DNA of 64,000 nucleotides from IMGVR_UViG_3300033141_006329:159371-223370; one strand, 5' to 3'. Positions 21,767-35,677 are shown, counted from the first letter of the stretch. Made by a program: numbers and translations. The notes: generated by a model from the letters alone, not told the origin.

Positions 21767-21866
21767 TTTAAATCTCCTATTATGTTATGATTTTTATTTG
21801 CAATTTTCTTTCTCATCCATTCTTATTTTTTAATACATTTCACCATTATTTTAAAGATCCAGCATC

Positions 21867-22226
21867 TTATCTTTTCCGACACTTCTCTTTAATTTTCATT
21901 CTTAACTCTGGAGATGGGAATGGGTTTTCTATACCATATTTTAGAGCTGTTGCTTTAATCTTCTCCTGAACCATATTCTTCTCCTTTTCAACCTTCAGTT
22001 CTTCCTGCTCCTTCTCATGTCCCCCACCAAACCAATATTCATGCAGTTCTGTTTTTGCCTTTTCTACTGCTTTATTATATTCCTTAAGTTTATATTTATA
22101 TATACTACTGCCCTTATCATCTCCAACAAATTTATGGGTTGAAAAATCATATTCTTTTCCATAATGCTCTGATATGTATTCTTTTATTTTCTTCTGTGTT
22201 TTTGATCCATAGTCGTCACCTAACAT
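21867..22226 (-). CDS. Chimeric or truncated protein ending in one LKYGIENP endonuclease-type repeat
   Basis: C-terminal KIKATALKYGIENPFPSPELR with no nuclease domain. Confidence 0.45.
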   Translation of the reverse strand: MLGDDYGSKTQKKIKEYISEHYGKEYDFSTHKFVGDDKGSSIYKYKLKEYNKAVEKAKTELHEYWFGGGHEKEQEELKVEKEKNMVQEKIKATALKYGIENPFPSPELRMKIKEKCRKR

Positions 22227-22240
22227 TTTAAATTCTCCTT

Positions 22241-23251
22241 TTATTGTTTATAATTTTCCATCAAAATATTTTTAAATTCTTCATCGTCTACATCCAAGAT
22301 ATTATTATCTTTATCAACCTTAACTCTCACAAATCTACACCCTAACTCCTCAGTTATCTCTTGTTGTCTTCTGATATCTTTCTTTTGACGATAATTATAA
22401 GAATGTTCGGGTTCATCTATCTCTATAGCTATATTCTTTTCCTCATCATAACCATCCAAAAAGTATCCTATAACTCTATACTCACCACCATTTTCAGCAT
22501 GTTGAAAATTAAAACCATTATCATTCAAATTTTCAATTATGTTGCAACCGCTTGGATTGTAGAGAGGTAAAATCTGACCATGACAATTTTTTATCCTTCT
22601 TAAATAACTATCACGGGCTCGTTGACGATTTTCTTTTGTTTTGGCGTAACAAACTTCACCATATTTTCTTAAACAAGTTTTTATAATTTTTTCTTTAATC
22701 ATTTCTGATTGTAGTGAACACCCCACACCATATTTTTTAAAACAAGTTTTTTTTACTTTCAATTTGAACCATATTGTCTGAGAGGGGTGTTCTACGTTAT
22801 ATTTTTTCAAACAAGTCTTTTTTATTTTATCCTGTATTTCATCATATTTTTCTAAACAAGTTTGTCTAAGTTTTTCTCTTACCTCTTCGATTTGTAACGG
22901 ACAACATACGCCATGGTTTTTAAAACAAGTCTTTTTCTTTTTTTCTTTTATTTCCTTAGACTGTGACGGATTTTCTACACCTCTATTTCTCATATTAGTT
23001 TGTTTCTTTTTTTCTTTTATTTCTTTAGACTGTGAGGGATGTTCTACATTATGATTTTCTAAACAAGTTTGTCTACGGTTTTCTCTTACCTCTTTTGTCC
23101 ATGCTCTTTGTTTTATTTTTTTTCTTGTTTCTGGACATTTACTTTGATTGGTTTCACAACACCACTTACCATTCTTAAACCTATGCTTCGCTTCCCTGCC
23201 ACATCCATACTCACACAACCTTACATTCTCTTTAACCTTAACTTCTTCCAT
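22241..23251 (-). CDS. Homing-endonuclease-like protein: TCLKKYGV repeats + PD-(D/E)XK nuclease
   Basis: About 7 KTC.KKYG/HNVE.P.Q repeats; nuclease domain closely similar to that of 19165..20274. Confidence 0.8.
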   Translation of the reverse strand: MEEVKVKENVRLCEYGCGREAKHRFKNGKWCCETNQSKCPETRKKIKQRAWTKEVRENRRQTCLENHNVEHPSQSKEIKEKKKQTNMRNRGVENPSQSKEIKEKKKKTCFKNHGVCCPLQIEEVREKLRQTCLEKYDEIQDKIKKTCLKKYNVEHPSQTIWFKLKVKKTCFKKYGVGCSLQSEMIKEKIIKTCLRKYGEVCYAKTKENRQRARDSYLRRIKNCHGQILPLYNPSGCNIIENLNDNGFNFQHAENGGEYRVIGYFLDGYDEEKNIAIEIDEPEHSYNYRQKKDIRRQQEITEELGCRFVRVKVDKDNNILDVDDEEFKNILMENYKQ

Positions 23252-23306
23252 AATTTATTCCTCTCTATTCTTCCTCTCGTATCCTTCCTACAAAATTAGA
23301 TTTTCC

Positions 23307-23711
23307 TTATATCTTCTCATATTTATTTTCAGCCACCTCTAATAATTCAGGAACTGTCCTTATCATCCTTAATAAAGTTACTCCGGCAGCTGGTATTAAA
23401 TCACCCTCCATCCACACTGTTAAAGTCCGTTGAGGTAAATCTAAAATTCTTTCCATAGTCGATAAGCTAACACCGGCCTCAACAAAATAATTTAATATAT
23501 TTATTACCGCTCTTTTTCTTTGTCTGATAATGACAACATTAATTTTTTCATCATTTTCACCGAAGAAATCGCCCTCTGTAAGACAAGTATTACATTTATA
23601 ATTAACAATAGTAATATATTCCTCATCAGAATAAGGTAATGAAATTAATTTTTTTTCTTCGGATTTTATAATATGCCCTGAACCACATGCTGGACAAATA
23701 TTGTTAGTCAT
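23307..23711 (-). CDS. MqsA-like antitoxin (Zn finger + HTH), no adjacent toxin
   Basis: CPACG..YKCNTC then MERILDLPQRTLTVW..AAGVTLLRMI..PELL. Confidence 0.7.
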   Translation of the reverse strand: MTNNICPACGSGHIIKSEEKKLISLPYSDEEYITIVNYKCNTCLTEGDFFGENDEKINVVIIRQRKRAVINILNYFVEAGVSLSTMERILDLPQRTLTVWMEGDLIPAAGVTLLRMIRTVPELLEVAENKYEKI

Positions 23712-23736
23712 TTTTTCTCCTCCAATCTTTTATTCA

Positions 23737-23916
23737 CTAATTCCCCATCCACCCATCTACTATAGATTTTGCTTTAGTATATTGTACCATTTTTTCTATT
23801 TCATCTCTAAAAGCATACTTAAGTGCTTCTAAGAATTTTTGGTCTAATTTTAGCTTAGCATATTCTTCTTCACTTATTGTTATTGTTTTTTTATTATCCA
23901 ATTTATTTCTTCCCAT
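23737..23916 (-). CDS. Small helical protein (59 aa, not in ORF track), paralog of 27285..27440
   Basis: TITISEEEYAKLKLDQKFLEALK. Confidence 0.55.
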   Translation of the reverse strand: MGRNKLDNKKTITISEEEYAKLKLDQKFLEALKYAFRDEIEKMVQYTKAKSIVDGWMGN

Positions 23917-23973
23917 TATCTGTTTAACTTATTTATATTTTTTAATTTGTTCAACCATCTCACTGGATTTCTC

Positions 23974-24273
23974 TCATTCATATTCTCCTCCTACCTCATA
24001 AAACGTTGTCAATAAATCCCCCACAATTATTTGACATCTATTAGTATATTCATTATTTTCATTTTGAAAGTCTCTAGGATTACATTTACTTAAATAATTA
24101 TGCACTATCATTTTTAATTCTGCTTCAAATCTTTCATTTGGTTCTTCAAATATACAATCCCAGCAACAATTGTCCCACTTACCAACTATCAGATACAAAA
24201 AACCAGATGCTTGCCCTCTGAAGGTACTCATAATACAGTTGTCAGTACAATCATTACACATCATATCCATCAT
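23974..24273 (-). CDS. Array family protein (pair with 24273)
   Basis: C-terminal GDLLTTFYEVGG. Confidence 0.7.
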   Translation of the reverse strand: MMDMMCNDCTDNCIMSTFRGQASGFLYLIVGKWDNCCWDCIFEEPNERFEAELKMIVHNYLSKCNPRDFQNENNEYTNRCQIIVGDLLTTFYEVGGEYE

Positions 24274-24563
24274 CAGTATTCCTCCCCCTCCTCCCAAAAT
24301 ATCCTAAATAAATTATCCTCAATATTTATAAATACGTCATCATTATATAAGTTGATCCGATATTTAAGTTCTTTACATGTATGATCCTTCAAATAATTAG
24401 AAACAATATTTCCCAACACATTTTTGAACTTTTCACTTCTCGTCTCAAAAGGATAAGAGGAATAAACCGAACCTCCACTATCCATCATTAAATACCAATA
24501 ATTACTGATTGGACCTCTGACAATAGATATGGTCCAACTATCTATATGAATTAATTTGTTCAT
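24273..24563 (-). CDS. Array family protein
   Basis: C-terminal EDNLFRIFWEEG. Confidence 0.7.
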   Translation of the reverse strand: MNKLIHIDSWTISIVRGPISNYWYLMMDSGGSVYSSYPFETRSEKFKNVLGNIVSNYLKDHTCKELKYRINLYNDDVFINIEDNLFRIFWEEGEEY

Positions 24564-24575
24564 TTTTCCTTTACC

Positions 24576-24872
24576 TCAATATAACCCCACACTTGTCTTT
24601 TTCCCTCTAAACTTTTTATTGTTGACTTTAGAAGGTTTAGTAATATATTTTCTAACTTCTGGTCTATTTTTAATAATGTCACAATAAGTTTTAGCCCAAT
24701 ATGAATTAGTTATTCTTCTCCACATTTCCTCTATATCATTTATATGTCTACAATATAAAAAAGCATCATTACTCTCGGTGATTAGTTTTCTTAGTTGTTC
24801 TGTCTCGACTCCTCTCAGACATTCGTTCACTGCCCAGTGACTCTTTTCATATTTGTTTGTTAATTTATTCAT
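24576..24872 (-). CDS. Short helical-repeat protein
   Basis: ITES..AFLYC and ITNS.WAKTYC repeats. Confidence 0.6.
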   Translation of the reverse strand: MNKLTNKYEKSHWAVNECLRGVETEQLRKLITESNDAFLYCRHINDIEEMWRRITNSYWAKTYCDIIKNRPEVRKYITKPSKVNNKKFRGKKTSVGLY

Positions 24873-24880
24873 AGTGCCCC

Positions 24881-25153
24881 CTAAAATGGATCCTTCCTCA
24901 CACTTATAAAATTTTCTGCATATCCTGAAAAATTCATTTCATAAACATCATCCACATCCGCCATCTCCTCTATAAAACCTTTCTCAATCATCCATGCAAT
25001 CAATGGTACACTGTAAGGATCTTTCCCAGTATCATCAGTATAATCAGTCTGGATAGAATTTTTATCTATTTCCTTTAGTGTCCTATATAATCCAAATATT
25101 ACAGAATCAGCACCCGCAGACGTTACAAATAATTTTCCTTTAGGTATTTTCAT
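24881..25153 (-). CDS. Hypothetical protein
   Basis: ATGA-coupled ORF. Confidence 0.6.
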   Translation of the reverse strand: MKIPKGKLFVTSAGADSVIFGLYRTLKEIDKNSIQTDYTDDTGKDPYSVPLIAWMIEKGFIEEMADVDDVYEMNFSGYAENFISVRKDPF

Positions 25154-25593
25154 TTTATTTCCCTTACCATATAACGTTTTTGCTCTACTAAATTTAGTTT
25201 CTTCCCTCTAATAACTGCTTCGGGGCGATCATCGATATAATCTCCTTCATCATCTTTTTCAAATTCCTGTAAAAACTTTAAAACTTTATCTTCATCATCA
25301 ACCCCAAATTCTTCAATCCTATAATAATTTTCATCGGGTCTATCTATACAACACGCCACATAAATCTTATCTGATTTTCTTGGCTTACTGTTTCCAAAAT
25401 CTAAAATATATTGATCTAACACCATAGGATTGGATTCTATTCCTCTAATCACACCGATAACATCTCCATCTTCATTGTCAATTTCATTTGCCCAATCCTC
25501 TGCTTTTTTTATTGTATCACACGATCCCGATTGTTGATAATGATGAGGATCTTGAAATATTACATATATTTTTTCACTATTTTCTTTTTTCAT
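25150..25593 (-). CDS. Internally duplicated hypothetical protein
   Basis: Two units, each KIYV.....VIRG. Confidence 0.6.
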   Translation of the reverse strand: MKKENSEKIYVIFQDPHHYQQSGSCDTIKKAEDWANEIDNEDGDVIGVIRGIESNPMVLDQYILDFGNSKPRKSDKIYVACCIDRPDENYYRIEEFGVDDEDKVLKFLQEFEKDDEGDYIDDRPEAVIRGKKLNLVEQKRYMVREIK

Positions 25594-26003
25594 TTTAATT
25601 CTCCTTCATAAAATATTCCTAATAAATTGTCTAAATCTATGTCTACTGGTTTCAATCCAACACGCCTAAAACTAACATTAGGCTCTCCACATCCCAATGT
25701 TGTAGATATTATTCTTGCTATGCTACCTTTTGATTTAAGATCCGTTTCACTAGATATCAATTCAGAAATTACCCTTGCCAAAACATAACCAAACTTAAAG
25801 TCATTGGTATCAAATCTTTGAGTATATAAACAACGACTACTAATATATTCAATGCACCATGCCTCTGGAAATCTTTGTAGAATAATACGAATATTATAGG
25901 ATACTTTTGGTGTAAAATAATCTACAACTAATCCTTTATGCTTCTCCCATATTATTCCTTCAAATTGTCTACATGTGGGTAATTCTTTTTCGAGGTTGCT
26001 CAT
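25590..26003 (-). CDS. Array family protein
   Basis: C-terminal LDNLLGIFYEG. Confidence 0.7.
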   Translation of the reverse strand: MSNLEKELPTCRQFEGIIWEKHKGLVVDYFTPKVSYNIRIILQRFPEAWCIEYISSRCLYTQRFDTNDFKFGYVLARVISELISSETDLKSKGSIARIISTTLGCGEPNVSFRRVGLKPVDIDLDNLLGIFYEGELK

Positions 26004-26305
26004 CTTAATTCTCCTCCACCATTAAATATTTCTCCCAACAAATTATTGGTAACATAATCATCAGTTCCGATATCTAATGCGCGATGAATCATGGGATCAA
26101 CATTAAAATAGCTATTGTAGTGAGATTTTACGTTTACATGCCAACCCTTATCATCCATAGATATACTATGAAATATCAAATACTCGAACTCATAGATTAG
26201 AGAATTTGCATTTGTACTATAACCAGTATATACATTTTCTTCCCCACAATTATGATCCAGCCAGAGTTCATTTTTTGTAAATCTTGCTTTTGCAAATTCT
26301 ATCAA
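26000..26305 (-). CDS. Array family protein, subfamily A
   Basis: SMDDKGW; RALDIGTDDYVTNNLLGEIFNGG. Confidence 0.75.
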   Translation of the reverse strand: MIEFAKARFTKNELWLDHNCGEENVYTGYSTNANSLIYEFEYLIFHSISMDDKGWHVNVKSHYNSYFNVDPMIHRALDIGTDDYVTNNLLGEIFNGGGELR

Positions 26306-26613
26306 TACGTTCCTCCCTCATAATAAACTCCCTCTATCAGTTTATCGATCCCTATATGTTTATCAACCGCAGTATCCAATGCTCGAAATAAAAATGCAGG
26401 AATAGTAGAATGTTCATAAGATGCTGACATTTGAGCCTGCCAACCTTTTTGAGTCATAAACAATCTATCAAAAATTAAATCCTTCTCGTAAAAATAATAA
26501 GTGAGAGGCTCTATGCGTTCCAAACGACCTCTACTTTGATGATAATTTTGATTTCCAAAATCATAATCCATGATAATCCCGGTTTCGTTGAAGTTCGCTT
26601 CTATAATATACAT
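26302..26613 (-). CDS. Array family protein, subfamily A
   Basis: LFMTQKGW; RALDTAVDKHIGIDKLIEGVYYEG. Confidence 0.75.
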   Translation of the reverse strand: MYIIEANFNETGIIMDYDFGNQNYHQSRGRLERIEPLTYYFYEKDLIFDRLFMTQKGWQAQMSASYEHSTIPAFLFRALDTAVDKHIGIDKLIEGVYYEGGTY

Positions 26614-26627
26614 CAATATTTTTCTCC

Positions 26628-26948
26628 CTATATCATCCATCTCACTACAGTTACCTTTAAATCATCTCCGGTCCCAGGATACATTATCTTAAAGAAGTTT
26701 AACATTTGTTCCCTGCCGGCAAAGCCATGATCAATACTGTCCCTTCTTTCTACTTCTCCTATAGTGATATGCTTAACAGAAATTATCCTTCTTATAACTG
26801 CCCAGCTGGGATCCTCATTTCCTATCAGGACAGTTCCTAGTTCATAATGACGATGACCTTTTCTTATAACCGTACTTTTCTTTTTATTTTGAACATCATC
26901 TCGCATATGATGTCCTCCTATTAATATTGCTTGTACTGGTGGTTTCAT
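26628..26948 (-). CDS. ASCH/PUA-like domain protein
   Basis: KKKSTVIRKG..DHGF..MYP..VTVVRW. Confidence 0.7.
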   Translation of the reverse strand: MKPPVQAILIGGHHMRDDVQNKKKSTVIRKGHRHYELGTVLIGNEDPSWAVIRRIISVKHITIGEVERRDSIDHGFAGREQMLNFFKIMYPGTGDDLKVTVVRWMI

Positions 26949-27283
26949 TTTTCTTCCTCCTTTCCTATCTCCATAAATTGTGTCAATAATTTATCTATAG
27001 TTATTTCATAATCTTCATCCTTTAAAATCTCATTCTTCAAAATTTGGATCCCACCCTTCTTCTTTGTAAGATCTGAAACAATTTGAAATAATATCTCACC
27101 AAAATTAAAATTACGAACGACAAAGAACAACCAACCTTGATTAACGAAACGAGTTGAAGAAAGATCGATAATATAGTTACCATCTATATTGGGAAATAAT
27201 TCAAACTTACACTTATTTTCATAATATAAAACCCAGCAATCATAATTACCATGTCTCTGATTCTTTATTTTATGCCATTTCAA
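26945..27283 (-). CDS. Array family protein (likely TTG start)
   Basis: LKW N-terminus after GGAGG; C-terminal IDKLLTQFMEIG. Confidence 0.65.
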   Translation of the reverse strand: MKWHKIKNQRHGNYDCWVLYYENKCKFELFPNIDGNYIIDLSSTRFVNQGWLFFVVRNFNFGEILFQIVSDLTKKKGGIQILKNEILKDEDYEITIDKLLTQFMEIGKEEEK

Positions 27284-27284
27284 A

Positions 27285-27440
27285 TTATTCTCCCTCCTTT
27301 TCCCATTCATCCAAAAGATTTGCTGCATCACTACATCCTTCCCAATTATCAAGTCCAGATTGTTCAAGTGCTTGTAACCATAGTCGATCCTTCAATAATT
27401 CATCATATTCTTTTTTGCTTATAGTTATTTGTTCTTCCAT
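27285..27440 (-). CDS. Small protein resembling phage gp5.9-type RecBCD-inhibitor annotations (51 aa, not in ORF track)
   Basis: MEEQITISKKEYDELLKDRLWLQALEQSGLDNWEGCSDA; GGAG RBS. Confidence 0.55.
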   Translation of the reverse strand: MEEQITISKKEYDELLKDRLWLQALEQSGLDNWEGCSDAANLLDEWEKEGE

Positions 27441-27452
27441 GATCTTCTCCTT

Positions 27453-27953
27453 CTAATATCTCAACTTATATAATCTGTTAAATTCATTACTCGGTTTAGC
27501 CCCTTCTATAATATCAATTAGTTCTTTCAATTGTTTAAGATATCTCATATTATAACCTTCCCATATATTTCGTTCCTTAAACTCACCATATCCCCTAACT
27601 ATACTAAAATCGATACCTAAACCAAAACGTATTTCAATGATAGCTGGTAGATTATACTTATTAGAGAAATAGTTTTTCCATCCCTCACAGGGTGTTCCAT
27701 AAAAATTATAATGATTGTTTTTTAATACATAATCAGATAGGTTGATATAAGTAAAACTATATTTATTTTCTGGATCTTTTCCTAATGGACCATATTTATA
27801 ACGTTTTGCCCAACTCTGTAATTTTTCTTCTGTTTTCTTTCTTTTTTCACAGTATAAAAAATGATATTCTGCATCATTGTTGTTTTCAAATGTATTTTTA
27901 CAAATGGGACATTCGTATTCAGTTAAGATAGTTTTTATCTGTTTGATTTTCAT
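27453..27953 (-). CDS. Zn-finger hypothetical protein
   Basis: YECPICKNTF..H..C. Confidence 0.6.
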   Translation of the reverse strand: MKIKQIKTILTEYECPICKNTFENNNDAEYHFLYCEKRKKTEEKLQSWAKRYKYGPLGKDPENKYSFTYINLSDYVLKNNHYNFYGTPCEGWKNYFSNKYNLPAIIEIRFGLGIDFSIVRGYGEFKERNIWEGYNMRYLKQLKELIDIIEGAKPSNEFNRLYKLRY

Positions 27954-27980
27954 TATTCTCCTTATTCAACTTAAAATTGT

Positions 27981-28205
27981 TCACCAAAACTTAAGGTCAT
28001 GTTTTGTTGCACTCACCATAAATAATGTAAATAATGTTATAGGTCCAAACAAACTCAGAAATAAAGATATTTTCATATTTGTCCAATAGTTTCGTTTTGC
28101 AAAGATGGGCCATTCTCCTTGGCACCAAGCAAAGTAAAAGCCGTGAGATAAAACACTACATATTAACCATCCTAAAATTATTACTATTATTATAATCTCT
28201 TTCAT
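27981..28205 (-). CDS. Small two-TM protein (paralog of next)
   Basis: Ends HDLKFW. Confidence 0.65.
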   Translation of the reverse strand: MKEIIIIVIILGWLICSVLSHGFYFAWCQGEWPIFAKRNYWTNMKISLFLSLFGPITLFTLFMVSATKHDLKFW

Positions 28206-28221
28206 AAGTCAACTCCTTTCT

Positions 28222-28443
28222 CTACCAAAATTTTAAACCATACTTAAGCCTGTGCATTAAAAAACTAATTACCAATCCTGGAAATCCAAAACCAAACCCT
28301 ATAATCATAGAACCAATCATATATCTATAATAATCTTTTTCAAAATATCCTGTAGGTTCTCTTATGAAATAGGCAAAGTTAATACCGTAAGAAATCACAC
28401 CACTCACAATCCATATAATAATAATTACCATATTCTCACTCAT
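28222..28443 (-). CDS. Small two-TM protein
   Basis: Ends YGLKFW. Confidence 0.65.
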   Translation of the reverse strand: MSENMVIIIIWIVSGVISYGINFAYFIREPTGYFEKDYYRYMIGSMIIGFGFGFPGLVISFLMHRLKYGLKFW

Positions 28444-28738
28444 ATTTTATACCTCTCTCCCATATCTCCTCTAATAAATTATCAGTTACATATTCATCAA
28501 CAGCATTTGATACAAGATTTAACAATTGTTCACACCGACTTACTAAGTTTTCGTTCTGATACATATCGAAATGCCAACCATTCTTAGTCATAATCAAACC
28601 ACTGAATACTAAGTCGTGAAATCTATAATATATCATCTCACACTCTAATCCAATTGTATTTCCCTCATGTTTATATGTAGCGGGATATTCAGTATTATAA
28701 TATATAGTCATAATATCTTTTTCAAATACAATTTTCAT
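28436..28738 (-). CDS. Array family protein, subfamily A
   Basis: MKIVF; IMTKNGW; NAVDEYVTDNLLEEIWERG. Confidence 0.75.
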   Translation of the reverse strand: MKIVFEKDIMTIYYNTEYPATYKHEGNTIGLECEMIYYRFHDLVFSGLIMTKNGWHFDMYQNENLVSRCEQLLNLVSNAVDEYVTDNLLEEIWERGIKYE

Positions 28739-29064
28739 AGGACCGATCCCCTACTACTAAAACCAACCAATAGTTCATCAAATCCTATATAATCATCCAC
28801 ACCAAAATCTATAGCTTTAAGAAGCTTCCACTGAAATTCTGTTTCCAGAGCGCGTTTATCGCTAAACCACCCCTGATTACGCATTACCAACTTATTGTAA
28901 TACGTAGTTCTAAACCTATACGATAGAAATTCATCTTCAATGCTCAAATAACCTATGTTAACTGAGCTAATGTCTGACCCTATATAATAGTTTATATACA
29001 ATTGATCCTCTTCAAAAACTGCTTGTAAGCTAAATCTATATGTCAGTTTCACTTTTCTTGTCAT
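28735..29064 (-). CDS. Array family protein, subfamily A
   Basis: VMRNQGW; FGVDDYIGFDELLVGFSSRG. Confidence 0.75.
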   Translation of the reverse strand: MTRKVKLTYRFSLQAVFEEDQLYINYYIGSDISSVNIGYLSIEDEFLSYRFRTTYYNKLVMRNQGWFSDKRALETEFQWKLLKAIDFGVDDYIGFDELLVGFSSRGSVL

Positions 29065-29366
29065 ACCTCTAACCCTTTCCCACTAAATCCTATTAACAAA
29101 TCATCCATCTTCAAATAATTATCCATCCCTTTAGGTATTGCTCTAACCGCAACAACCATTATGCTTTCAAACCCTTCTATAATAGAAGGATAGGACCACC
29201 CATCCTTATCCATTATTATTTTTTTAACGCACAGATCTTTATCAAAATCATATGAAATATTTTCATAATCAATACATAGATTGCCCTGATGAGCTGGAGC
29301 ATTGGCGTTGGGAAAATAAATAAATATTTCCTTATCTGTAACTGTTACTTCGACTGGTATATTCAT
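29061..29366 (-). CDS. Array family protein, subfamily A
   Basis: IMDKDGW; GMDNYLKMDDLLIGFSGKG. Confidence 0.75.
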   Translation of the reverse strand: MNIPVEVTVTDKEIFIYFPNANAPAHQGNLCIDYENISYDFDKDLCVKKIIMDKDGWSYPSIIEGFESIMVVAVRAIPKGMDNYLKMDDLLIGFSGKGLEV

Positions 29367-29668
29367 GATAATACTCCTGCTCCTTTCTCACCAAATTTCA
29401 ATAGTAAATCCTCAAATTTTATATATTTATCTATCCCTATTGATAGTGCCCTGTATAATTCATTCATGGCATTATCATACCCACCCTCGACATTAGGTAC
29501 ATTCCAACCATCTTTGGTTATAGTTAAATAATCGAAGCATATATCATCGAATTGATAAGTAGTGTATCCTTCTCCAACCATTCTTCCTTCATGCATTGTT
29601 TTGCTGAAGTCATAAAATAATATCATCTTTTTGTTTTCAAATGTTATCTCCAATCTTTCATATGCCAT
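29363..29668 (-). CDS. Array family protein, subfamily A
   Basis: ITKDGW; GIDKYIKFEDLLLKFGEKG. Confidence 0.75.
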   Translation of the reverse strand: MAYERLEITFENKKMILFYDFSKTMHEGRMVGEGYTTYQFDDICFDYLTITKDGWNVPNVEGGYDNAMNELYRALSIGIDKYIKFEDLLLKFGEKGAGVLS

Positions 29669-29990
29669 AGACTATTCCTCCCGTCCCAATATTAAACAAA
29701 AGATCCTCAAACTTTATGTATACATCAGTATAATAATCCATAGCCGCAAATAGATCATTCATAGCATCATTCTTATTTTTGGAAGTAATCCTATTAACAA
29801 CCCAGCCCTCTTCCCGCAGTGTTAGTGTATTAAAACAGACTCCTGAAAATTCATATGTAAGAAAATTTTCATCTCCAATACATATGGAACCCTCATAACT
29901 CGCATAACATCCACCATTTTTGTAGTAGTTTATCCTTATCGCAAATCCTGAAAAAGTTATATTTAGATCACAATCGTCTCCTGTATCCAT
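29658..29990 (-). CDS. Array family protein, subfamily A
   Basis: LREEGW; TDVYIKFEDLLFNIGTGG. Confidence 0.75.
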   Translation of the reverse strand: MDTGDDCDLNITFSGFAIRINYYKNGGCYASYEGSICIGDENFLTYEFSGVCFNTLTLREEGWVVNRITSKNKNDAMNDLFAAMDYYTDVYIKFEDLLFNIGTGGIVYGI

Positions 29991-30003
29991 CAGATTTTCT
30001 CCT

Positions 30004-30345
30004 TCATATTGTTATTCCTTTCCTGCCGAAATTGTCCATAAATTCTATAATTCCTATATAATCATCTACCCCTGCATTTATCGCTTTGTATAAATAATTC
30101 ATCTCAACTATCTCCGAATCTTGATAGAGTATTTCATTTATGTACCAACCATTCTTATTCATTATTAGTCTATTGAAATATAGTTCATACTCTTTAGGAA
30201 ATGAATAGGTCATATCCTCAACTTTCAAAAACCCCATATATACTGCAGGTATATCGATCATTTTTCCTGTTATACTCGGCATATAAATAGATATTGTCAT
30301 GGCAAGTATATCATCTGTGAATTTCACCTTTGTAAGATACATCAC
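30004..30345 (-). CDS. Array family protein, subfamily A
   Basis: IMNKNGW; AGVDDYIGIIEFMDNFGRKG. Confidence 0.75.
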   Translation of the reverse strand: MMYLTKVKFTDDILAMTISIYMPSITGKMIDIPAVYMGFLKVEDMTYSFPKEYELYFNRLIMNKNGWYINEILYQDSEIVEMNYLYKAINAGVDDYIGIIEFMDNFGRKGITI

Positions 30346-30634
30346 TTATTCCTTTCTCTCCAAACTTCACTAATAAATCAGTTGTAAATACATCAACTCC
30401 TCTCATTGCTTCTCTTCGAAGATTAAGTTCGAATGCGCGTTCAATGCAACCGTTTATATCCACATACCAACTACCATCTTCACGCATTTCTATTCCTTTG
30501 ATACTTGTAAGTCCAAATTTGTAATATATGGGATCGCATTGAGTTAGATATCCTTCAATTGTATATTCATCATCAGAAAAAGATCCATACCCATAGGTCA
30601 CAATCATTTTATCATCCTCAAATCTTATTTTCAT
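30311..30634 (-). CDS. Array family protein, subfamily A
   Basis: MKIRF; MREDGSW; GVDVFTTDLLVKFGEKG. Confidence 0.75.
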   Translation of the reverse strand: MKIRFEDDKMIVTYGYGSFSDDEYTIEGYLTQCDPIYYKFGLTSIKGIEMREDGSWYVDINGCIERAFELNLRREAMRGVDVFTTDLLVKFGEKGISDVSYKGEIHR

Positions 30635-30644
30635 ATTTCATCCC
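30616..30644. repeat. 29-nt exact direct repeat spanning a gene junction (copy 1)
   Basis: CCTCAAATCTTATTTTCATATTTCATCCC, also at 30894-30922. Confidence 0.85.
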
Positions 30645-30912
30645 CTTTATAATATAACATAGTTAACAGATTATCAGTTATGTATTCATCAATTCCGCAA
30701 TTAGCCGATTTACAGAATAAGATAGAATCTTTTTTGGATGGGATTTTATGAGGTTCTGTGATAAAAATCCAACCCCCCTCATTCAAACTTAAAACGGTCT
30801 TAAAATTTTTAAAATCATAATATATATGATCGGAGTCAAAGTTTAGAGAGCCTATATTGTTGATATTAGTAAATTCTATGGTCATCTTTTTTGCCTCAAA
30901 TCTTATTTTCAT
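30631..30912 (-). CDS. Array family protein, subfamily A
   Basis: MKIRF; LNEGGW; GIDEYITDNLLTMLYYKG. Confidence 0.75.
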   Translation of the reverse strand: MKIRFEAKKMTIEFTNINNIGSLNFDSDHIYYDFKNFKTVLSLNEGGWIFITEPHKIPSKKDSILFCKSANCGIDEYITDNLLTMLYYKGDEI

Positions 30913-30922
30913 ATTTCATCCC
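30894..30922. repeat. 29-nt exact direct repeat (copy 2)
   Basis: Same sequence as 30616-30644. Confidence 0.85.
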
Positions 30923-31192
30923 CTTGTAATATATACTATTCAACAAATTATCAGTTACGTAATCGTCTATACCATCAGTTGTTTTTCTTAATACCATATA
31001 TATAATATCATTATAACCACCACTTACATTAGGTGTATCACAACATTTCTTTGTTATTATCAGGGTATCGAAACGCAAATTTTTAAATTTATAAGAAATA
31101 CATTCATCGTTATAATAATCTAAATTACCCATATGTTGATAATATTTATTATATGTCACAATCATCTGATCTTCTGTAAATTTCACCTTCAT
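30896..31192 (-). CDS. Array family protein, subfamily A
   Basis: MKVKF; GIDDYVTDNLLNSIYYKG. Confidence 0.75.
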   Translation of the reverse strand: MKVKFTEDQMIVTYNKYYQHMGNLDYYNDECISYKFKNLRFDTLIITKKCCDTPNVSGGYNDIIYMVLRKTTDGIDDYVTDNLLNSIYYKGMKYENKI

Positions 31193-31488
31193 ATTTCATC
31201 TCCTATTTGATACATACCTTCCAGAATATTATCTGTTACATATTTATCAACAGCTACTGACATTGCCTTATATAATTTACACATGCTATCATTATCATCA
31301 GAGTTATCTTTATAATCATGTGCAACCCAACCATTCTCGGTCATCTCTAAACTTTGAAAAATTAACTCATGTGTAAAATCATATATTAACCATTCACGCA
31401 ATAATCCAGCAAGTGTAATTGTATCATCGCCGCCACTATTACAGGTTATAAACATCTTTTTTGGTTTAAATTCTACTACCATATCCAT
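31189..31488 (-). CDS. Array family protein, subfamily A
   Basis: EMTENGW; AVDKYVTDNILEGMYQIG. Confidence 0.75.
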   Translation of the reverse strand: MDMVVEFKPKKMFITCNSGGDDTITLAGLLREWLIYDFTHELIFQSLEMTENGWVAHDYKDNSDDNDSMCKLYKAMSVAVDKYVTDNILEGMYQIGDEI

Positions 31489-31817
31489 CCACCTATTCCT
31501 CCCTCAAATAACACATTCAATAATTCATCTGTATTGATACTAATCCAAATATTATGGAATGCTGTTTTCATAATAATTTTTATCATATCTCCAAGTTCAT
31601 TATCTACAAAAAACTCATCCAATATCTTAACTAAAACTTCTACAAAATGGGGGGAAGTATTGGAAAAGGATATGTTATAATGAAAAACACTTTTGAGATA
31701 TATAGTAGTAAACCTATGATTCCAAAATATCTGCAAATTTCTATTTTTACCCAATCCCATATAATAACAAAGTTTGCTATTCTCAGTTTTTCTAATCCTG
31801 CGTCCTGCCGGTTTCAT
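31476..31817 (-). CDS. Array family protein
   Basis: C-terminal TDELLNVLFEGG. Confidence 0.7.
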   Translation of the reverse strand: MKPAGRRIRKTENSKLCYYMGLGKNRNLQIFWNHRFTTIYLKSVFHYNISFSNTSPHFVEVLVKILDEFFVDNELGDMIKIIMKTAFHNIWISINTDELLNVLFEGGIGGWIW

Positions 31818-32140
31818 ATCTTGACTCCTTTCTCATACATCTCTCCCACAAAAGAATCGATATCTACCGATACAGTAGCATGATTATTCCTAAGTAATAC
31901 ATCTTTAAAATAACTAAAGCCTTTCTTATCAATAGCATTCATCATAACTTCCTTAAGTATATTTCTAAAGGACTTTTCGCCCAATTCGAACGTAATAACG
32001 GCAAAGTCTGACTCCGCCCAATAATAATTACATGCTAAATGCCACCTATCTGAATAATATGAATGAATCACATCATTCCCCTCCAAACATTTATCAACAT
32101 CCATACAATAATCAATTGCGTTACTGCGAACCCATTCCAT
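31814..32140 (-). CDS. Array family protein (pair with 32121)
   Basis: MEW..CMDVDKCLEG; IDSFVGEMYEKG. Confidence 0.7.
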   Translation of the reverse strand: MEWVRSNAIDYCMDVDKCLEGNDVIHSYYSDRWHLACNYYWAESDFAVITFELGEKSFRNILKEVMMNAIDKKGFSYFKDVLLRNNHATVSVDIDSFVGEMYEKGVKI

Positions 32141-32462
32141 ATTCTCCTCCTTTCTCATACATTGTTTCAATTAATAAACTAATATCTATGATCAGCTCTG
32201 CGCCAATATTCCTATTGATCGAATCCTTAAAATCTTCAAATCCTTTTCTATCTACCGCATCTATCATAAATTCCTTAAGTGTATCTCTAAACGATTCTCC
32301 CACATGATTAAATATAATACAACAGTATTCAAAATGCAACATATAATTAGTAGAAAGTATCCACCTATCATCGGAACAATAAGAATAAATTATACAATCA
32401 CCCTCAACACACATATCCACATCTTTACAAAATCCTACAGAAGCTTCGTGATACCATCTCAT
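32121..32462 (-). CDS. Array family protein
   Basis: MRW..CKDVDMCVEG; ISLLIETMYEKGG. Confidence 0.7.
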   Translation of the reverse strand: MRWYHEASVGFCKDVDMCVEGDCIIYSYCSDDRWILSTNYMLHFEYCCIIFNHVGESFRDTLKEFMIDAVDRKGFEDFKDSINRNIGAELIIDISLLIETMYEKGGEYGMGSQ

Positions 32463-32752
32463 ATATTTGCTCCTTTCTCAAACATCTCAAGTAATAAATC
32501 ATCATTAAAGCCGAATACAGAATAATTAAATACACTGATAGATTCCTCAGTAAACTCGAAATTCTTAACAATATTTTTCAAATCTTTTTCAAGTTCTTTC
32601 ACCCGGCTGTTATTAACCAAAAATGCTATATAGCCCCAATCGTCTCCTAACTTCGTCCTTCCAATTCGTACCGTTACCCAACCATAATGAATATTTGGAA
32701 TATAACTCTCTGTACTATATACATTCAGAAACTTATCATCTTCAGGTATCAT
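32459..32752 (-). CDS. Array family protein
   Basis: C-terminal NDDLLLEMFEKG. Confidence 0.7.
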   Translation of the reverse strand: MIPEDDKFLNVYSTESYIPNIHYGWVTVRIGRTKLGDDWGYIAFLVNNSRVKELEKDLKNIVKNFEFTEESISVFNYSVFGFNDDLLLEMFEKGANI

Positions 32753-33119
32753 AACTAGTCCCTTCCTTATTAAAAATACGCATCAAATCATCAGTATCTA
32801 ATATTATAGTACCGATTTCCGGAATAAATTCACTTAGTAAACCACCCTTATAATATTTAGTCTCCATTATTTCAGTTAAGGATTTTATTTGTCCCATACT
32901 GATATTATGCATATAATAAAATGTAATATAATTTTGAATGTAATGACAATTTGAACTAGTATCCTTAAGCTGAAAGCTCACAGTATTTGATAAACTCAGT
33001 CCCACATAAAGAGATTTTGCCTTATCTGGAATATCTGCGCTATAAGATTTTACCCACCAATATTTAGTCGTGTCGACCTTCTTATATACCCACTCACCTA
33101 ATTTTTTTATGTGTTTCAT
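32742..33119 (-). CDS. Array family protein
   Basis: C-terminal TDDLMRIFNKEG. Confidence 0.7.
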   Translation of the reverse strand: MKHIKKLGEWVYKKVDTTKYWWVKSYSADIPDKAKSLYVGLSLSNTVSFQLKDTSSNCHYIQNYITFYYMHNISMGQIKSLTEIMETKYYKGGLLSEFIPEIGTIILDTDDLMRIFNKEGTSYDT

Positions 33120-33481
33120 ATCATAACTCCTTCAATACAAATAATATTCAAATATTCTTCGGTTTCAAACGATGTTGTTATGGGGTTGTAAATATTTTCA
33201 CCTGTAATAATTAATTTTTTTATATCCTGCTCTTTGTCATACTTCTCATCTAAAATAGTTTTTATATATTTGTGTAATCTTTCATCTGCATTTTGAAATT
33301 CTAATGTGTATAGAGACGACATGGCTGAGGGGCTAGTTTTTGTAACTGAAAGCAATACATCATTCACGCGATAATAATAATCTAATCTTATTGTCAAATC
33401 ACTATGATAACTAGTCTCGGTGCCATCTAAATATATATTTCCTGTCAATCCGCTTCTTTTCCAACTTAGCATATAATACAT
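33116..33481 (-). CDS. Array family protein (paralog of 62711)
   Basis: TGNIYL..LDYY; TEEYLNIICIEG. Confidence 0.7.
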   Translation of the reverse strand: MYYMLSWKRSGLTGNIYLDGTETSYHSDLTIRLDYYYRVNDVLLSVTKTSPSAMSSLYTLEFQNADERLHKYIKTILDEKYDKEQDIKKLIITGENIYNPITTSFETEEYLNIICIEGVMI

Positions 33482-33801
33482 CCTCCCGTTAACATAATGT
33501 TCAAGGTGTCTTTTTCCCTTAAGCGATAACTGTTCTTGTCCGGGTCTATATTATCTAATTTATTATACAATTCTTCCATACTCAAATCACTAAGAAGATC
33601 ACAAGCAATATCAACTAGTTTGCGCTTGTTTCTTCCCATATCGCACTCGAATATAATACCACTACCACGTTCTACCTCTCTTCTGAACATTATTATCTGT
33701 ATATATGTCTTCACGAAATACCTTATAATCAACTCAAACTCACCAGACCGATATGAATAGATATTTCCCTTGCATTTGAATTGATCTCTATTTATCCTCA
33801 T
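33466..33801 (-). CDS. Array family protein (pair with 33788)
   Basis: C-terminal KDTLNIMLTGG. Confidence 0.7.
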   Translation of the reverse strand: MRINRDQFKCKGNIYSYRSGEFELIIRYFVKTYIQIIMFRREVERGSGIIFECDMGRNKRKLVDIACDLLSDLSMEELYNKLDNIDPDKNSYRLREKDTLNIMLTGGCIIC

Positions 33802-34126
33802 ATCCTACACCCTCCCCTATCATAATTTCTAATATATCAACCTCCTTAAATGTTGGGCTATATTTTTCTGGATCTACTTTTTCAAAATTCTCATACAATA
33901 TATTCATAGGTGTTTCACTAATTATCTCACACATAATATCGGTAACTTTATCGATGCAATTTTCCAGATAATACTTAAAGCGAATGCCAAACCCTATCTC
34001 CTCATTGTCCTTAAAAATTAATACCTGGGGCTGATCAAATCGTATAACAACGACAAACTTACCGTGTTGATACCTTCGATAATTACTATTGCGAGAAACC
34101 TCAAATAAATCCTTATAATTTTTCAT
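33788..34126 (-). CDS. Array family protein
   Basis: C-terminal VDILEIMIGEG. Confidence 0.7.
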   Translation of the reverse strand: MKNYKDLFEVSRNSNYRRYQHGKFVVVIRFDQPQVLIFKDNEEIGFGIRFKYYLENCIDKVTDIMCEIISETPMNILYENFEKVDPEKYSPTFKEVDILEIMIGEGVGYEDK

Positions 34127-34484
34127 AACTCTCTCCTGAATAATAAAAACAGTTAATGATCCCACATAGATTAATATACATACTTTCCATTGTACAATCT
34201 TTATAATGCATCTTATTCAAATGCCAATATAATCGTTCAAAACCAAATGTTGATAATAGAGAGGAAATCATATACAGATTAAAATCTAATATACCCGGCA
34301 ACCTAAAGTTTAAATTTATTGCATTATTGCTATTATTAAAAATACGTAACAGAATCCGATCAATAGGATCATGTATTATGTAATATATAGGGCTAATTCC
34401 CAACTTCTCTGTTTTATGATATGTAAAACCAAAATAATCCTTGCTCACCTGCCAATTGATGTTATATCTAACTATATCTTTCAT
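34113..34484 (-). CDS. Array family protein
   Basis: INW N-terminus; LCGIINCFYYSG. Confidence 0.65.
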   Translation of the reverse strand: MKDIVRYNINWQVSKDYFGFTYHKTEKLGISPIYYIIHDPIDRILLRIFNNSNNAINLNFRLPGILDFNLYMISSLLSTFGFERLYWHLNKMHYKDCTMESMYINLCGIINCFYYSGESYEKL

Positions 34485-34836
34485 CCATACCTACCCCCTT
34501 AAATATCCAATCCTCATCATGTTCAATATAATAAACATCTTCCATAATATCCCCAATATGCGGATATGCTCCTAACATACCTGCCTCAATACAATTCCTA
34601 ATAATACTAAATAAGTAGATCAGATCAATATGATTTAATCCTTTAACAGTGCATATTACTTGCATGTTACTAGACCCCTCTACATTCGGAGCTATTAAAA
34701 CCACATATTTATAGTTACCATATAATTTTATGTATACAGGATAATCATACTTATTTTCAAAGTTACTCTCTGTAGTCCATACATCATCATCTCTAAACCT
34801 CCATTCATATCCTAAACAAACTATATATCTATTCAT
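34468..34836 (-). CDS. Array family protein (divergent tag)
   Basis: YEW N-terminus; HDEDWIFKG. Confidence 0.6.
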   Translation of the reverse strand: MNRYIVCLGYEWRFRDDDVWTTESNFENKYDYPVYIKLYGNYKYVVLIAPNVEGSSNMQVICTVKGLNHIDLIYLFSIIRNCIEAGMLGAYPHIGDIMEDVYYIEHDEDWIFKGVGMDERYS

Positions 34837-35165
34837 ATTTCCACCCCCTCATACATGAAATCGATCTCATAATATGTCATATGTAAAGCCGACATAAAAT
34901 GATCAAACTGTTCAATGCCATAATGTAACAAATCTAGTATACAATTAATAAAAATCCGAGCCTCGTTAGTATCACAATTCATAGTCAATACTGAATAAGG
35001 ATGAGAAAAGTTAATAGCACACCCGCCAGTACATTTGAATATCTCGATGGATTTATTTTCAATATTCATCTTATAATATGTCTCATTATCGATATCATAT
35101 CCTGAACTCCAGCTAGAATTTCTCTTCATATCCCACGCCTCCATGCATGAAATCAATTTCCTCAT
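34833..35165 (-). CDS. Array family protein (pair with 35113)
   Basis: FSHPYSVLTMNC; YEIDFMYEG. Confidence 0.65.
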   Translation of the reverse strand: MRKLISCMEAWDMKRNSSWSSGYDIDNETYYKMNIENKSIEIFKCTGGCAINFSHPYSVLTMNCDTNEARIFINCILDLLHYGIEQFDHFMSALHMTYYEIDFMYEGVEI

Positions 35166-35415
35166 GATGTATATATAATTTTGTCATAAAATACTCAATA
35201 TTCATGTCCAATAATTTCCTAACAATATCAATGAAAATTACACCATCTAATATATTACAACTCATTGTTAAACACTGGTAAGGGTGAGAATAAACAACAA
35301 CACAACCACCAAGATAACATTCAAATAGGTCTAATCTCTTTTTACCACCAAATGTATAATATAAATTACTATCAGTGTCATGATCACTCATCCAACCATT
35401 CGGATAATTTTTCAT
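35113..35415 (-). CDS. Array family protein, first gene of the array
   Basis: YSHPYQCLTMSC; EEIDFMHGG; start MKNYP after AAAGGAG. Confidence 0.65.
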   Translation of the reverse strand: MKNYPNGWMSDHDTDSNLYYTFGGKKRLDLFECYLGGCVVVYSHPYQCLTMSCNILDGVIFIDIVRKLLDMNIEYFMTKLYIHHEEIDFMHGGVGYEEKF

Positions 35416-35444
35416 TTTTATATCTCCTTTCAAAAATTAACAAT

Positions 35445-35459
35445 AAAATATTTTGTCCT
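35445..35459 (-). promoter_or_regulatory. Degenerate late-like motif facing the array
   Basis: AGGACAAAATATTTT. Confidence 0.35.
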
Positions 35460-35470
35460 CTTAATCATAA

Positions 35471-35485
35471 AGGACAAATTATAAA
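35471..35485 (+). promoter_or_regulatory. Putative late promoter motif
   Basis: AGGACAAATTATAAA. Confidence 0.6.
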
Positions 35486-35562
35486 GACATGTCACCTCAA
35501 TAAAGCCCCTCATAGGTGACACATAGGGTCGGTTCCTTATATGGATCCGGCCCATTTATTTA
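35486..35562 (+). ncRNA. Candidate small two-hairpin RNA
   Basis: TGTCACCT/AGGTGACA stem then GGGTCGG..CCGGCCC stem and T-rich tail, directly behind a promoter motif; no ORF. Confidence 0.4.
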
Positions 35563-35614
35563 TATCAAAATCCACATACCTAAACATATAATCCCTCTCA
35601 GATAAGAATTATAA

Positions 35615-35629
35615 AGGACAAACTATAAA
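35615..35629 (+). promoter_or_regulatory. Putative late promoter motif
   Basis: AGGACAAACTATAAA upstream of the tube gene. Confidence 0.65.
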
Positions 35630-35677
35630 CAAGATTATTTCATATAGTTAATCATATATTAAAAAGGAGAATTAGAA

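What the first reader, a model, noticed from the sequence alone, without database searches (positions are those of the whole stretch)
26000..31488. Twelve-member subfamily A: tandem paralogs with conserved scaffold and variable loops
Seen: ORFs at 26000, 26302, 28436, 28735, 29061, 29363, 29658, 30004, 30311, 30631, 30896 and 31189 align by eye. The pattern is MK(I/V)xFxxxxMxIxY..GxL....I.Y.F..L.F..L.(M/I)TxxGW..(helix)..A...G(V/I)DxY(V/I)xxxLL. The segments between these anchors differ in length and sequence, and all frames are intact. Inference: a beta-sheet scaffold with diversified surface loops, resembling a binder repertoire under diversifying selection rather than decaying duplicates.
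Basis: partly seen in the sequence, partly recalled or inferred. Interest (0 to 1): 0.75.

Follow-up and report, generated by a model that had tools for sequence, protein, structure and literature searches.

The report
Twelve-copy orphan gene family, jumbo phage
An uncultured giant phage from marine sediment carries twelve old, intact copies of a small protein with no relatives outside its own lineage, packed into one long accessory operon; they probably bind different host targets, but nothing shows they are under diversifying selection.

Summary
Twelve ORFs of 93-113 aa, all on the minus strand, form one family at 19-36 % pairwise identity. Each is recovered by a leave-one-out HMM at E 8e-14 to 8e-23. 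There are exactly 12 in the 223-kb genome record.

The family is an orphan. Pfam, PHROGs, NCBIfam and PADLOC give nothing. Searches of 1.84 and 5.8 billion proteins find only this phage and one sister phage, which holds 6 of the 12.

AlphaFold (pLDDT 76) gives a six-stranded beta meander plus a C-terminal helix, with no significant structural match.

The genes are cassettes in an 11.5-kb, 36-gene operon that also encodes a T7 Gp5.9-like RecBCD inhibitor. The operon fills a hotspot between the tail-sheath and baseplate modules.

The "invariant" C-terminal glycine is largely the Shine-Dalgarno site of the next gene. An 18-residue C-terminal tail is shared by 46 small proteins in the genome.

Whole cassettes are gained or lost by crossovers in the conserved gene junctions.

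Orthologue dN/dS is 0.30 at conserved sites and 0.47 at variable sites. The copies are maintained, not decaying, but diversifying selection is not shown.

The likely role is an early host-takeover or counter-defence binder set. This is inferred, not shown.

The parts
31189..31488 (-). family A member, 99 aa; orthologue present in the sister phage
30896..31192 (-). family A member, 98 aa (GW motif replaced by CC); absent from the sister phage, a 280-nt whole-cassette indel
30631..30912 (-). family A member, 93 aa; orthologue (partial) in the sister phage
30311..30634 (-). family A member, 107 aa, with a C-terminal extension overlapping the next gene; orthologue in the sister phage
30004..30342 (-). 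family A member, 112 aa from the ATG at 30342; absent from the sister phage
29658..29990 (-). family A member, 110 aa; absent from the main sister contig, but a 202-nt low-depth contig of the same run carries a copy
29363..29668 (-). family A member, 101 aa; absent from the sister phage
29061..29366 (-). family A member, 101 aa; orthologue in the sister phage
28735..29064 (-). family A member, 109 aa; orthologue in the sister phage
28436..28738 (-). family A member, 100 aa (query of structure model 2); absent from the sister phage
26302..26640 (-). family A member, 112 aa; absent from the sister phage
26000..26305 (-). family A member, 101 aa, TTG start; orthologue in the sister phage
23974..35433 (-). 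The operon-like block that holds the family: 36 small genes with overlapping or abutting stops and starts. No gap exceeds 30 nt and there is no internal terminator-like site.
27285..27440 (-). T7 Gp5.9-like RecBCD inhibitor gene inside the block, between the two groups of family A
   Evidence: Pfam PF25708 E 1.7e-15, above the curated cut-off; PHROG 'host RecBCD nuclease inhibitor' 2.5e-11
30593..30654 (-). Junction repeat (tail codons + Shine-Dalgarno + start + first codons). Further copies lie at 30871-30932 and 31151-31212. It is the crossover site of the 280-nt cassette indel.
29378..29414 (-). Tail-coding repeat (DLL.KFGEKG + Shine-Dalgarno). A second copy lies at 30347-30383. It is the crossover site of the 969-nt three-cassette indel.
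35464..35622 (-). Two copies of the promoter-like motif TTTGTCCTTTATRAT (35608-35622 and 35464-35478) upstream of the first gene of the block

Best explanation
Family A is a lineage-specific, anciently duplicated multigene family. Its members are small (93-113 aa), acidic and soluble, and they belong to an uncultured ~306-kb myovirus from marine sediment.

Each protein is predicted to be a six-stranded antiparallel beta meander whose conserved face is covered by a C-terminal helix. The opposite sheet face, the loops and the start of the helix differ between copies.

The genes are cassettes in an 11.5-kb leftward operon of 36 tightly packed small genes. Each cassette carries the Shine-Dalgarno site of the next one inside its last codons, so the cassettes are probably translated as a coupled chain.

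The operon also encodes a T7 Gp5.9-like RecBCD inhibitor. It fills a hotspot between the tail-sheath and baseplate modules that is only 3 kb long in more distant relatives. I therefore read it as an accessory host-takeover or counter-defence module. On this reading the twelve copies are stoichiometric binders with different targets (host or defence proteins), each kept by purifying selection.

The array changes by birth and death. Unequal homologous crossovers in the conserved junctions (tail codons, Shine-Dalgarno, start) remove or add whole cassettes, so related phages carry different subsets (12 against 6).

Shown: the family, its restriction to this lineage, its age, purifying selection, the dual-coded tail, the cassette indels and the genomic context.

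Inferred: early expression, binding, and counter-defence as the role.
For: - Family and copy number.
- Orphan status: no Pfam, PHROGs, NCBIfam or PADLOC family. hmmsearch of 1.84 billion representatives and a search of 5.8 billion proteins find only this phage and a sister phage.
- Fold: (pLDDT 68 and 76.5, same strand order). Conservation is periodic in the strands.
- Acidic and soluble: median pI 4.7.
- Age: paralogue branches of 1-2 substitutions per site against 0.1-0.3 for orthologues.
- Selection: gene-wide dN/dS 0.18-0.76; conserved sites 0.30, variable sites 0.47.
- Translational coupling: a Shine-Dalgarno site 6-13 nt before 10-11 of 12 starts, lying in the previous gene's last codons. 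At the tail, Glu is GAG in 23 of 26 cases. Gly is GGA or GGG in 37 of 43 and never GGC, while the genome prefers GGT.
- Context: Gp5.9-like gene inside the block. No terminator-like site inside the block.
- Hotspot: the sheath-to-baseplate interval is 16.6 kb here against 3.0 kb in L017.
- Cassette indels with crossovers in the junction repeats.
Against: - There are no expression data and no experimental data. The phage is known only from metagenomes.
- The functional reading rests on guilt by association with a single annotatable neighbour (Gp5.9-like) and on general properties (small, acidic, accessory, variable in copy number).
- The block lies between structural modules, which would also suit virion-associated proteins.
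- The structure model has only moderate confidence, and its last 15 residues are poorly defined.
- The selection analysis has five orthologue pairs from two genomes, so it could miss positive selection on a few sites.
Confidence: 0.45

Rival explanations
1. The proteins are packaged in the virion and ejected, like T4 internal proteins or the paralogous ejection-protein families of giant phages. The shared C-terminal tail would then be a packaging address.
For: - The block lies between the tail-sheath gene and the baseplate genes.
- Forty-six small proteins share a position-specific C-terminal tail that could be an address.
- Paralogous families of ejection proteins are described in giant phages such as SPN3US (PMC5694885, listed; abstract only read).
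Against: - The block is on the opposite strand to the structural genes.
- It contains a Gp5.9-like cytoplasmic inhibitor.
- It is missing from relatives that keep the same structural modules.
- Known capsid-targeting signals are N-terminal and followed by a protease site (established knowledge of T4). No such motif is seen here.
- Half of the copies are dispensable in the sister phage.
Confidence: 0.15
2. The array is a poly-immunity locus. Each copy would neutralise a different toxin (toxin-antitoxin or abortive-infection toxins, or polymorphic toxins), as in the heterogeneous tandem arrays of small immunity proteins in bacteria.
For: - Weak profile match to the type VI immunity protein TsiV3 over nearly the full length (4noo_B, E 0.11).
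- Weak structural resemblance to two CdiI-type immunity proteins of the same size (9l5u_D Z 5.0, 8ssm_D Z 4.6).
- Tandem, divergent, small and acidic.
Against: - None of these matches is significant. The aligner's own note puts a typical best chance match at Z 7-8.
- Foldseek did not list TsiV3 among the top 50 PDB hits for either model.
- TsiV3 is periplasmic by established knowledge. No N-terminal hydrophobic stretch is evident by eye in the twelve alignment rows; no signal-peptide predictor was run.
- No toxin gene is recognisable nearby.
Confidence: 0.1
3. The copies have no individual function. The array would be a by-product of recombination-prone junctions, persisting because it costs little.
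For: - Six of twelve copies are absent from the sister phage.
- Three orthologue pairs have dN/dS of 0.60-0.76.
- Crossovers at the junctions make gain and loss easy.
Against: - All twelve frames are intact after divergence of 1-2 substitutions per site.
- Core residues are invariant.
- dN/dS is below 1 in all five pairs, with a clear contrast between core and surface.
- Each gene keeps its own ribosome-binding site.
Confidence: 0.1
4. One reading: a binder repertoire shaped by diversifying (positive) selection on surface loops.
For: - Variation is concentrated on the exposed sheet face, the loops and the helix start.
- dN/dS is higher there than in the core, 0.47 against 0.30.
- Array content differs between strains.
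Against: - dN/dS at the variable sites is well below 1, with a 95 % interval of 0.32-0.70.
- The values are no higher than in unrelated neighbouring genes.
- The core/surface contrast is what any folded protein shows.
Confidence: 0.15

Closest known systems
Host-takeover / early accessory gene clusters of large lytic phages (Bacillus phage SPO1 host-takeover module, T4 and T7 early small-gene clusters including gp5.9; from established knowledge)
   Same: Many small, tightly packed genes with strong ribosome-binding sites. They are accessory, on their own transcription unit, and contain inhibitors of host nucleases. Here a Gp5.9-like gene sits inside the block.
   Different: Those clusters are mostly unrelated single genes. 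Here one gene has twelve old paralogues, and 46 genes share a C-terminal tail. Early timing is not shown here.
Multigene families of large DNA viruses that evolve by birth and death in tandem arrays (African swine fever virus MGF110/360, poxvirus gene 'accordions'; from established knowledge)
   Same: Tandem paralogues, copy number that differs between close strains, and gain and loss by unequal recombination.
   Different: No sequence relationship. The duplications here are old, not recent amplifications. The hosts are bacteria.
Superfamily S of the same genome (families B, C, D, E, F and I; 31 members aligned in A3)
   Same: Same size, same arrays, same strand and the same 18-residue C-terminal tail in register. 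Also confined to this phage lineage.
   Different: Profile-profile comparison aligns only the last ~19 residues (probability 15 %). The bodies are not detectably related, whereas families B-I relate to each other at 85-96 %.
Helix-grip (START / SRPBCC / AHSA1 / Bet v 1) fold
   Same: An antiparallel sheet packed by a long C-terminal helix. These are the best structural neighbours in three libraries.
   Different: Only TM 0.45-0.55 and Z up to 5.2, which is within the chance range. The family is 40-60 residues shorter, lacks the N-terminal beta-alpha-alpha part, and has no sequence signal.
Small immunity proteins in tandem arrays (CdiI, TsiV3, poly-immunity loci)
   Same: About 90-110 aa, divergent tandem copies, weak sequence and fold resemblance.
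   Different: The matches are not significant, no toxin partner is recognisable nearby, and no N-terminal signal-like stretch is evident by eye.

Membership tests
Phage T7 Gp5.9 RecBCD inhibitor (PF25708) | Match to the Pfam model above its gathering score | tested here: not met
   None of ten family A members scanned against Pfam matches. Only the neighbouring 51-aa gene at 27285-27440 does (E 1.7e-15).
START / SRPBCC helix-grip superfamily | Fold match clearly above background that covers the domain, including the N-terminal beta-alpha-alpha and a ligand cavity | tested here: not met
   VIA-align Z up to 5.2, where the tool's typical chance best is 7-8. Foldseek E is at least 0.085 and Atlas TM at most 0.55. 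The proteins are only 93-113 aa. No Pfam START-type hit.
TsiV3 (TsaB) type VI immunity protein | Significant sequence or fold similarity to 4noo_B / 4nso_B | tested here: not met
   Profile E 0.11. Not among the top 50 Foldseek PDB matches for either model, nor among the top 50 VIA-align matches for the one model tested that way.
CdiI-type immunity proteins | Fold match above background, and an adjacent toxin | tested here: inconclusive
   9l5u_D Z 5.0 and 8ssm_D Z 4.6 over 69 residues, within the chance range. No toxin gene is recognisable in the block.
Superfamily S of the same genome | Profile-profile similarity over the body of the protein, not the tail alone | tested here: inconclusive
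   hhalign aligns only residues 89-107 of 109, at probability 15 %. The tail is in register in 46 proteins. Common descent is neither shown nor excluded.
Gene family under diversifying selection | dN/dS above 1 at a class of sites | tested here: not met
   Variable sites 0.47 (0.32-0.70), conserved sites 0.30, from five orthologue pairs. Power is low because only two genomes are available.
Translationally coupled operon | Stop and start overlapping or abutting, with a Shine-Dalgarno site inside the upstream coding sequence | tested here: met
   Coupling itself (dependence of downstream translation on upstream translation) is not testable here.
Early / host-takeover module | Expression in the first minutes of infection | not testable with these tools
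   No RNA run was listed, and the phage is uncultured.

The most novel reading that the evidence does not exclude
The 18-residue C-terminal tail shared by at least 46 small proteins of this phage would be a common docking or address module. It consists of a strand, an Asp cap, an amphipathic LL..hh helix and a Gly. It would tie a large library of different heads to one hub, either a host machine or a phage-encoded partner. Family A would be the largest set of heads. The same DNA stretch would serve three roles at once: protein module, ribosome-binding site of the next cistron, and crossover site for cassette exchange. That would be a built-in system for shuffling an effector library.
Probability: 0.15. 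Interest if true: 0.75.

Novelty: new variant of a known kind. Interest (0 to 1): 0.42.

Why it matters
Large phages carry hundreds of small genes of unknown function, and many counter-defence proteins have come from such regions. This case has several useful properties:
- It is an unusually regular example: twelve old, intact paralogues with one scaffold and different surfaces.
- The paralogues sit next to a known nuclease inhibitor.
- The array's content differs between sister phages.
- It gives a small set of related proteins that can be synthesised and screened against defence systems or host proteomes.

It also gives two general lessons. First, part of a "conserved protein motif" at the end of tightly packed phage genes can be the ribosome-binding site of the next gene. 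Second, conserved gene junctions can act as crossover points for whole-cassette gain and loss.

Tried and rejected
- **Family libraries.** Pfam, PHROGs, NCBIfam and PADLOC scans of the members gave only scattered hits with E above 0.001.
- **Spurious protein hits.** Two long proteins hit by the profile (P0016, P0017; E 5e-6 and 3e-4, six stretches each) are repetitive cadherin-like and MucBP adhesins. I treated them as composition or repeat artefacts.
- **Structure searches.** Two models were compared with PDB, BFVD, AlphaFold DB clusters, the ESM Atlas and VIA-align wide. Nothing was significant.
- **ESM Atlas by features.** Scores up to 0.86, in the range of shuffled proteins.
- **TsiV3 lead.** E 0.11, rejected as not significant. 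A review I consulted gave no structural detail.
- **Neighbouring genes as members.** Neither the HMM nor hhalign supports membership for any of the 24 neighbouring small genes. Only the tail aligns.
- **DNA-level homogenisation of gene ends (gene conversion).** Identical residues use identical codons in 0.59 (N-end) and 0.53 (C-end) of cases against 0.49 in the middle. This is too small a difference to claim.
- **Sigma-70 promoter scan.** 91 sites against 84 expected, so uninformative.
- **Rfam and tRNA scans.** Nothing.
- **Sequencing runs.** None was listed for the array itself. The tail-sheath gene found a marine-sediment run.
- **More distant relatives.** Phages with 52-60 % identical sheath have no family A, S or tail matches in the parts held. 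These records are 10-17 % complete, so absence is weak evidence.
- **Literature.** Searches for comparable phage paralogue arrays gave nothing specific.


Full report
**1. What is there**

The window is the last 64 kb of a 223-kb IMG/VR virus record. The same sequence, 100 % identical over 20.3 kb, lies on a 306,137-bp JGI metagenome contig.

The genome is a low-GC (about 32 %) myovirus. It has a tail sheath, gp25-like and T4-baseplate-like genes on the plus strand. Its tail sheath is at most about 27 % identical to that of any phage in the GenBank phage collection searched. A public run that holds a close relative is labelled marine sediment metagenome.

The twelve ORFs of the finding are all present and all on the minus strand.

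**2. The family is real**

- Pairwise identity is 19-36 %.
- BLASTP clustering gives exactly these twelve.
- An HMM finds only these twelve in the window and in the whole record.
- A leave-one-out HMM recovers each omitted member at E 8e-14 to 8e-23.

**3. The family is an orphan**

- Pfam, PHROGs, NCBIfam and PADLOC give nothing.
- A profile search of 1.84 billion representative proteins returns twelve real hits. All are this phage's own proteins or their orthologues in one sister phage, from Logan contigs of SRR3715733 (L001, L003).
- The same search returns two repetitive adhesins, which I regard as artefacts.
- A word-indexed search of 5.8 billion proteins gives the same picture.
- Phages whose tail sheath is 52-60 % identical have no match in the parts available.

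**4. Structure**

Two AlphaFold runs with different query members agree on six antiparallel strands in a meander, followed by a C-terminal helix.

- Model 1 (pLDDT 68) breaks the helix at about residue 80.
- Model 2 (pLDDT 76.5, pTM 0.66) makes it continuous from residue 63 to 95.
- The last 10-15 residues are poorly defined in both.

Conservation in the strands alternates. F5, M10/I12/Y14, G26/L28, I36/Y38/F40, F45/L48/M50 and G54-W55 are conserved, and the positions between them are free. The most variable stretch is strand 6, the following loop and the first half of the helix. So one sheet face is buried and the other is exposed and variable.

No structural neighbour is significant:

| Library | Best result |
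|---|---|
| Foldseek PDB | E 0.085 |
| BFVD and AlphaFold DB | E above 0.1 |
| VIA-align wide | Z 5.2 |
| ESM Atlas | TM up to 0.55 |

The nearest shapes are truncated START/AHSA1-like helix-grip domains and two CdiI immunity proteins. All are within the chance range stated by the tools. A PDB sequence-profile hit to TsiV3 (E 0.11) is not significant.

The proteins are acidic, with a median pI of 4.7.

**5. Context**

The twelve genes lie in two groups, 28436-31488 (ten genes) and 26000-26640 (two genes). Both groups are inside a block of 36 small minus-strand genes (23974-35433). In this block stops and starts overlap or abut, no gap exceeds 30 nt, and no terminator-like site occurs.

Between the two groups sit six other genes. 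One is a 51-aa T7 Gp5.9-like RecBCD inhibitor (Pfam E 1.7e-15, above the curated cut-off; PHROG 'host RecBCD nuclease inhibitor'). Two are small proteins that look membrane-spanning by eye. No other gene of the block can be named.

Upstream of the first gene lie two copies of the motif TTTGTCCTTTATRAT. The motif occurs five times in the record, always on the minus strand.

In L017, a relative with a 60 % identical sheath, the interval between the sheath gene and the orthologue of window 35678-36412 is 3.0 kb. Here it is 16.6 kb. The block therefore fills an expandable hotspot between conserved structural modules.

**6. The conserved C-terminus has two layers**

Every gene of the block carries the Shine-Dalgarno site of the next gene in its last codons.

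An ungapped profile of the last 18 residues up to the conserved Gly has the consensus h.h.h-D-x-h-L-x-x-h-h-E-x-G.

- It scores at least 8 bits in 47 ORFs of the record.
- Forty-six of these hits are at the C-terminus, all on the minus strand and all in three arrays.
- Shuffled ORFs reach 5.9 bits at most, and reversed ORFs give one hit above 8.

Codon use separates the two layers:

- The Glu at -2 is GAG in 23 of 26 cases, in a genome of 32 % GC.
- The Gly is GGA or GGG in 37 of 43 cases and never GGC, while long genes prefer GGT. These residues are therefore largely a ribosome-binding site read as protein.
- The Leu at -7 uses five different codons, so the LL..hh part is conserved as protein.

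Outside family A, families B, C, D, E, F and I of the same genome are related to each other (hhalign 85-96 %). They form a superfamily of at least 31 members (A3), also confined to this lineage. Family A matches that superfamily only in the tail.

**7. History and selection**

The tree is star-like. Paralogue branches are 1-2 substitutions per site and orthologue branches 0.1-0.3. The duplications are therefore several-fold older than the split from the sister phage.

The sister phage has six of the twelve copies. Its contigs join 26307 to 27288, 29396 to 30366 (969 nt, three cassettes) and 30906 to 31187 (280 nt, one cassette). Three-way alignments place the crossovers as follows:

- The 969-nt event crosses over in the shared tail-coding stretch (GATTTA..AAATTTGGTGAGAAAGG).
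- The 280-nt event crosses over in the Shine-Dalgarno/start stretch (GATGAAATATGAA).
- Both stretches are direct repeats in the window.

A low-depth 202-nt contig of the same run carries a copy of 29658-29990. Array content is therefore polymorphic in that sample.

Orthologue dN/dS is 0.18-0.76 for five family members and 0.17-0.69 for neighbouring genes. Split by paralogue conservation, it is 0.30 at conserved sites and 0.47 at variable sites (95 % interval 0.32-0.70). This shows maintenance by purifying selection that is weaker on the surface. It gives no sign of positive selection at the power available.

**8. Reading**

The descriptive picture is firm: an old, maintained orphan multigene family, encoded as translationally coupled cassettes in an accessory operon, evolving by birth and death through junction crossovers.

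The functional reading is an inference. I take the family to be an early host-takeover or counter-defence set of small binders with different targets. This rests on five points: the Gp5.9-like neighbour, the accessory hotspot, small size and acidity, strain-variable content, and the pattern of conserved core with variable surface. I put it at about 0.45.

They are listed with their evidence in the Rival explanations section.

**9. Novelty**

Tandem paralogue arrays of small accessory genes are known in large phages and other large DNA viruses, so the kind is known. Four things are new here:

- the family itself, which has no relatives;
- its size and age;
- a tail shared by 46 genes that doubles as the next gene's ribosome-binding site;
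- the demonstration that the junctions are the crossover points of whole-cassette indels.

Noticed in passing
window 23974-34484 and 58519-63731; genome record 142957-159610 (locus L005): At least 46 small minus-strand proteins in three arrays share an 18-residue C-terminal tail (h.h.hD.hL..hhE.G). Thirty-one of them form a superfamily (families B, C, D, E, F, I) that is distinct from family A and also confined to this phage lineage.
   Followed up: partly
window 27285-27440 (-): A 51-aa T7 Gp5.9-like RecBCD inhibitor gene lies inside the array (Pfam PF25708, E 1.7e-15). It is conserved in the sister phage at 88 % identity.
   Followed up: yes
window 35608-35622, 35464-35478, 17300-17314 and 7757-7771 (all -); genome 121571: The motif TTTGTCCTTTATRAT occurs 8 times in the window with up to 2 mismatches, against 1.45 expected. 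There are five near-exact copies in the record, all on the minus strand and upstream of leftward gene blocks. It is a candidate phage promoter. The copy at 35452-35478 is also part of a hairpin.
   Followed up: partly
window 14435-15628 (+), 19165-20274 (-), 22241-23251 (-): Three paralogous proteins with zinc fingers, DUF7487 and a restriction-endonuclease-like C-terminus (PF18741-like). They look like homing-endonuclease-type genes flanking the tail-sheath gene.
   Followed up: no
window 16399-17367 (-), 20271-21269 (-): Two leucine-rich-repeat proteins next to the sheath gene. The first is 90 % identical in the sister phage. Its true start is probably downstream of the promoter-like motif at 17300-17314.
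   Followed up: no
window 27981-28205 and 28222-28443 (-): A pair of paralogous 73-74-aa proteins that look like two-pass membrane proteins lies between the two groups of family A. They are the fastest-diverging genes between the two phages (58-65 % identity).
   Followed up: no
window 19079-35677 compared with L017 11957-14942: The interval between the tail-sheath gene and the first baseplate-module gene is 16.6 kb here and 3.0 kb in a relative with a 60 % identical sheath. This is an expandable hotspot inside the structural region.
   Followed up: yes
genome record 156597-157094 (-), outside the window: A 165-aa ORF carries the tail motif internally (about residue 65), followed by ..EVIM... 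This may be two cassettes fused by loss of a stop codon.
   Followed up: no
window 23307-23711 (-): A 134-aa protein with a zinc ribbon and a weak MqsA-antitoxin-like match (E 0.005, below the Pfam cut-off) lies just downstream of the array.
   Followed up: no
whole record: IMG/VR classes the 223-kb record as a provirus at 71 % completeness. The identical JGI contig is 306 kb, so the 'provirus' trimming probably removed phage sequence.
   Followed up: no
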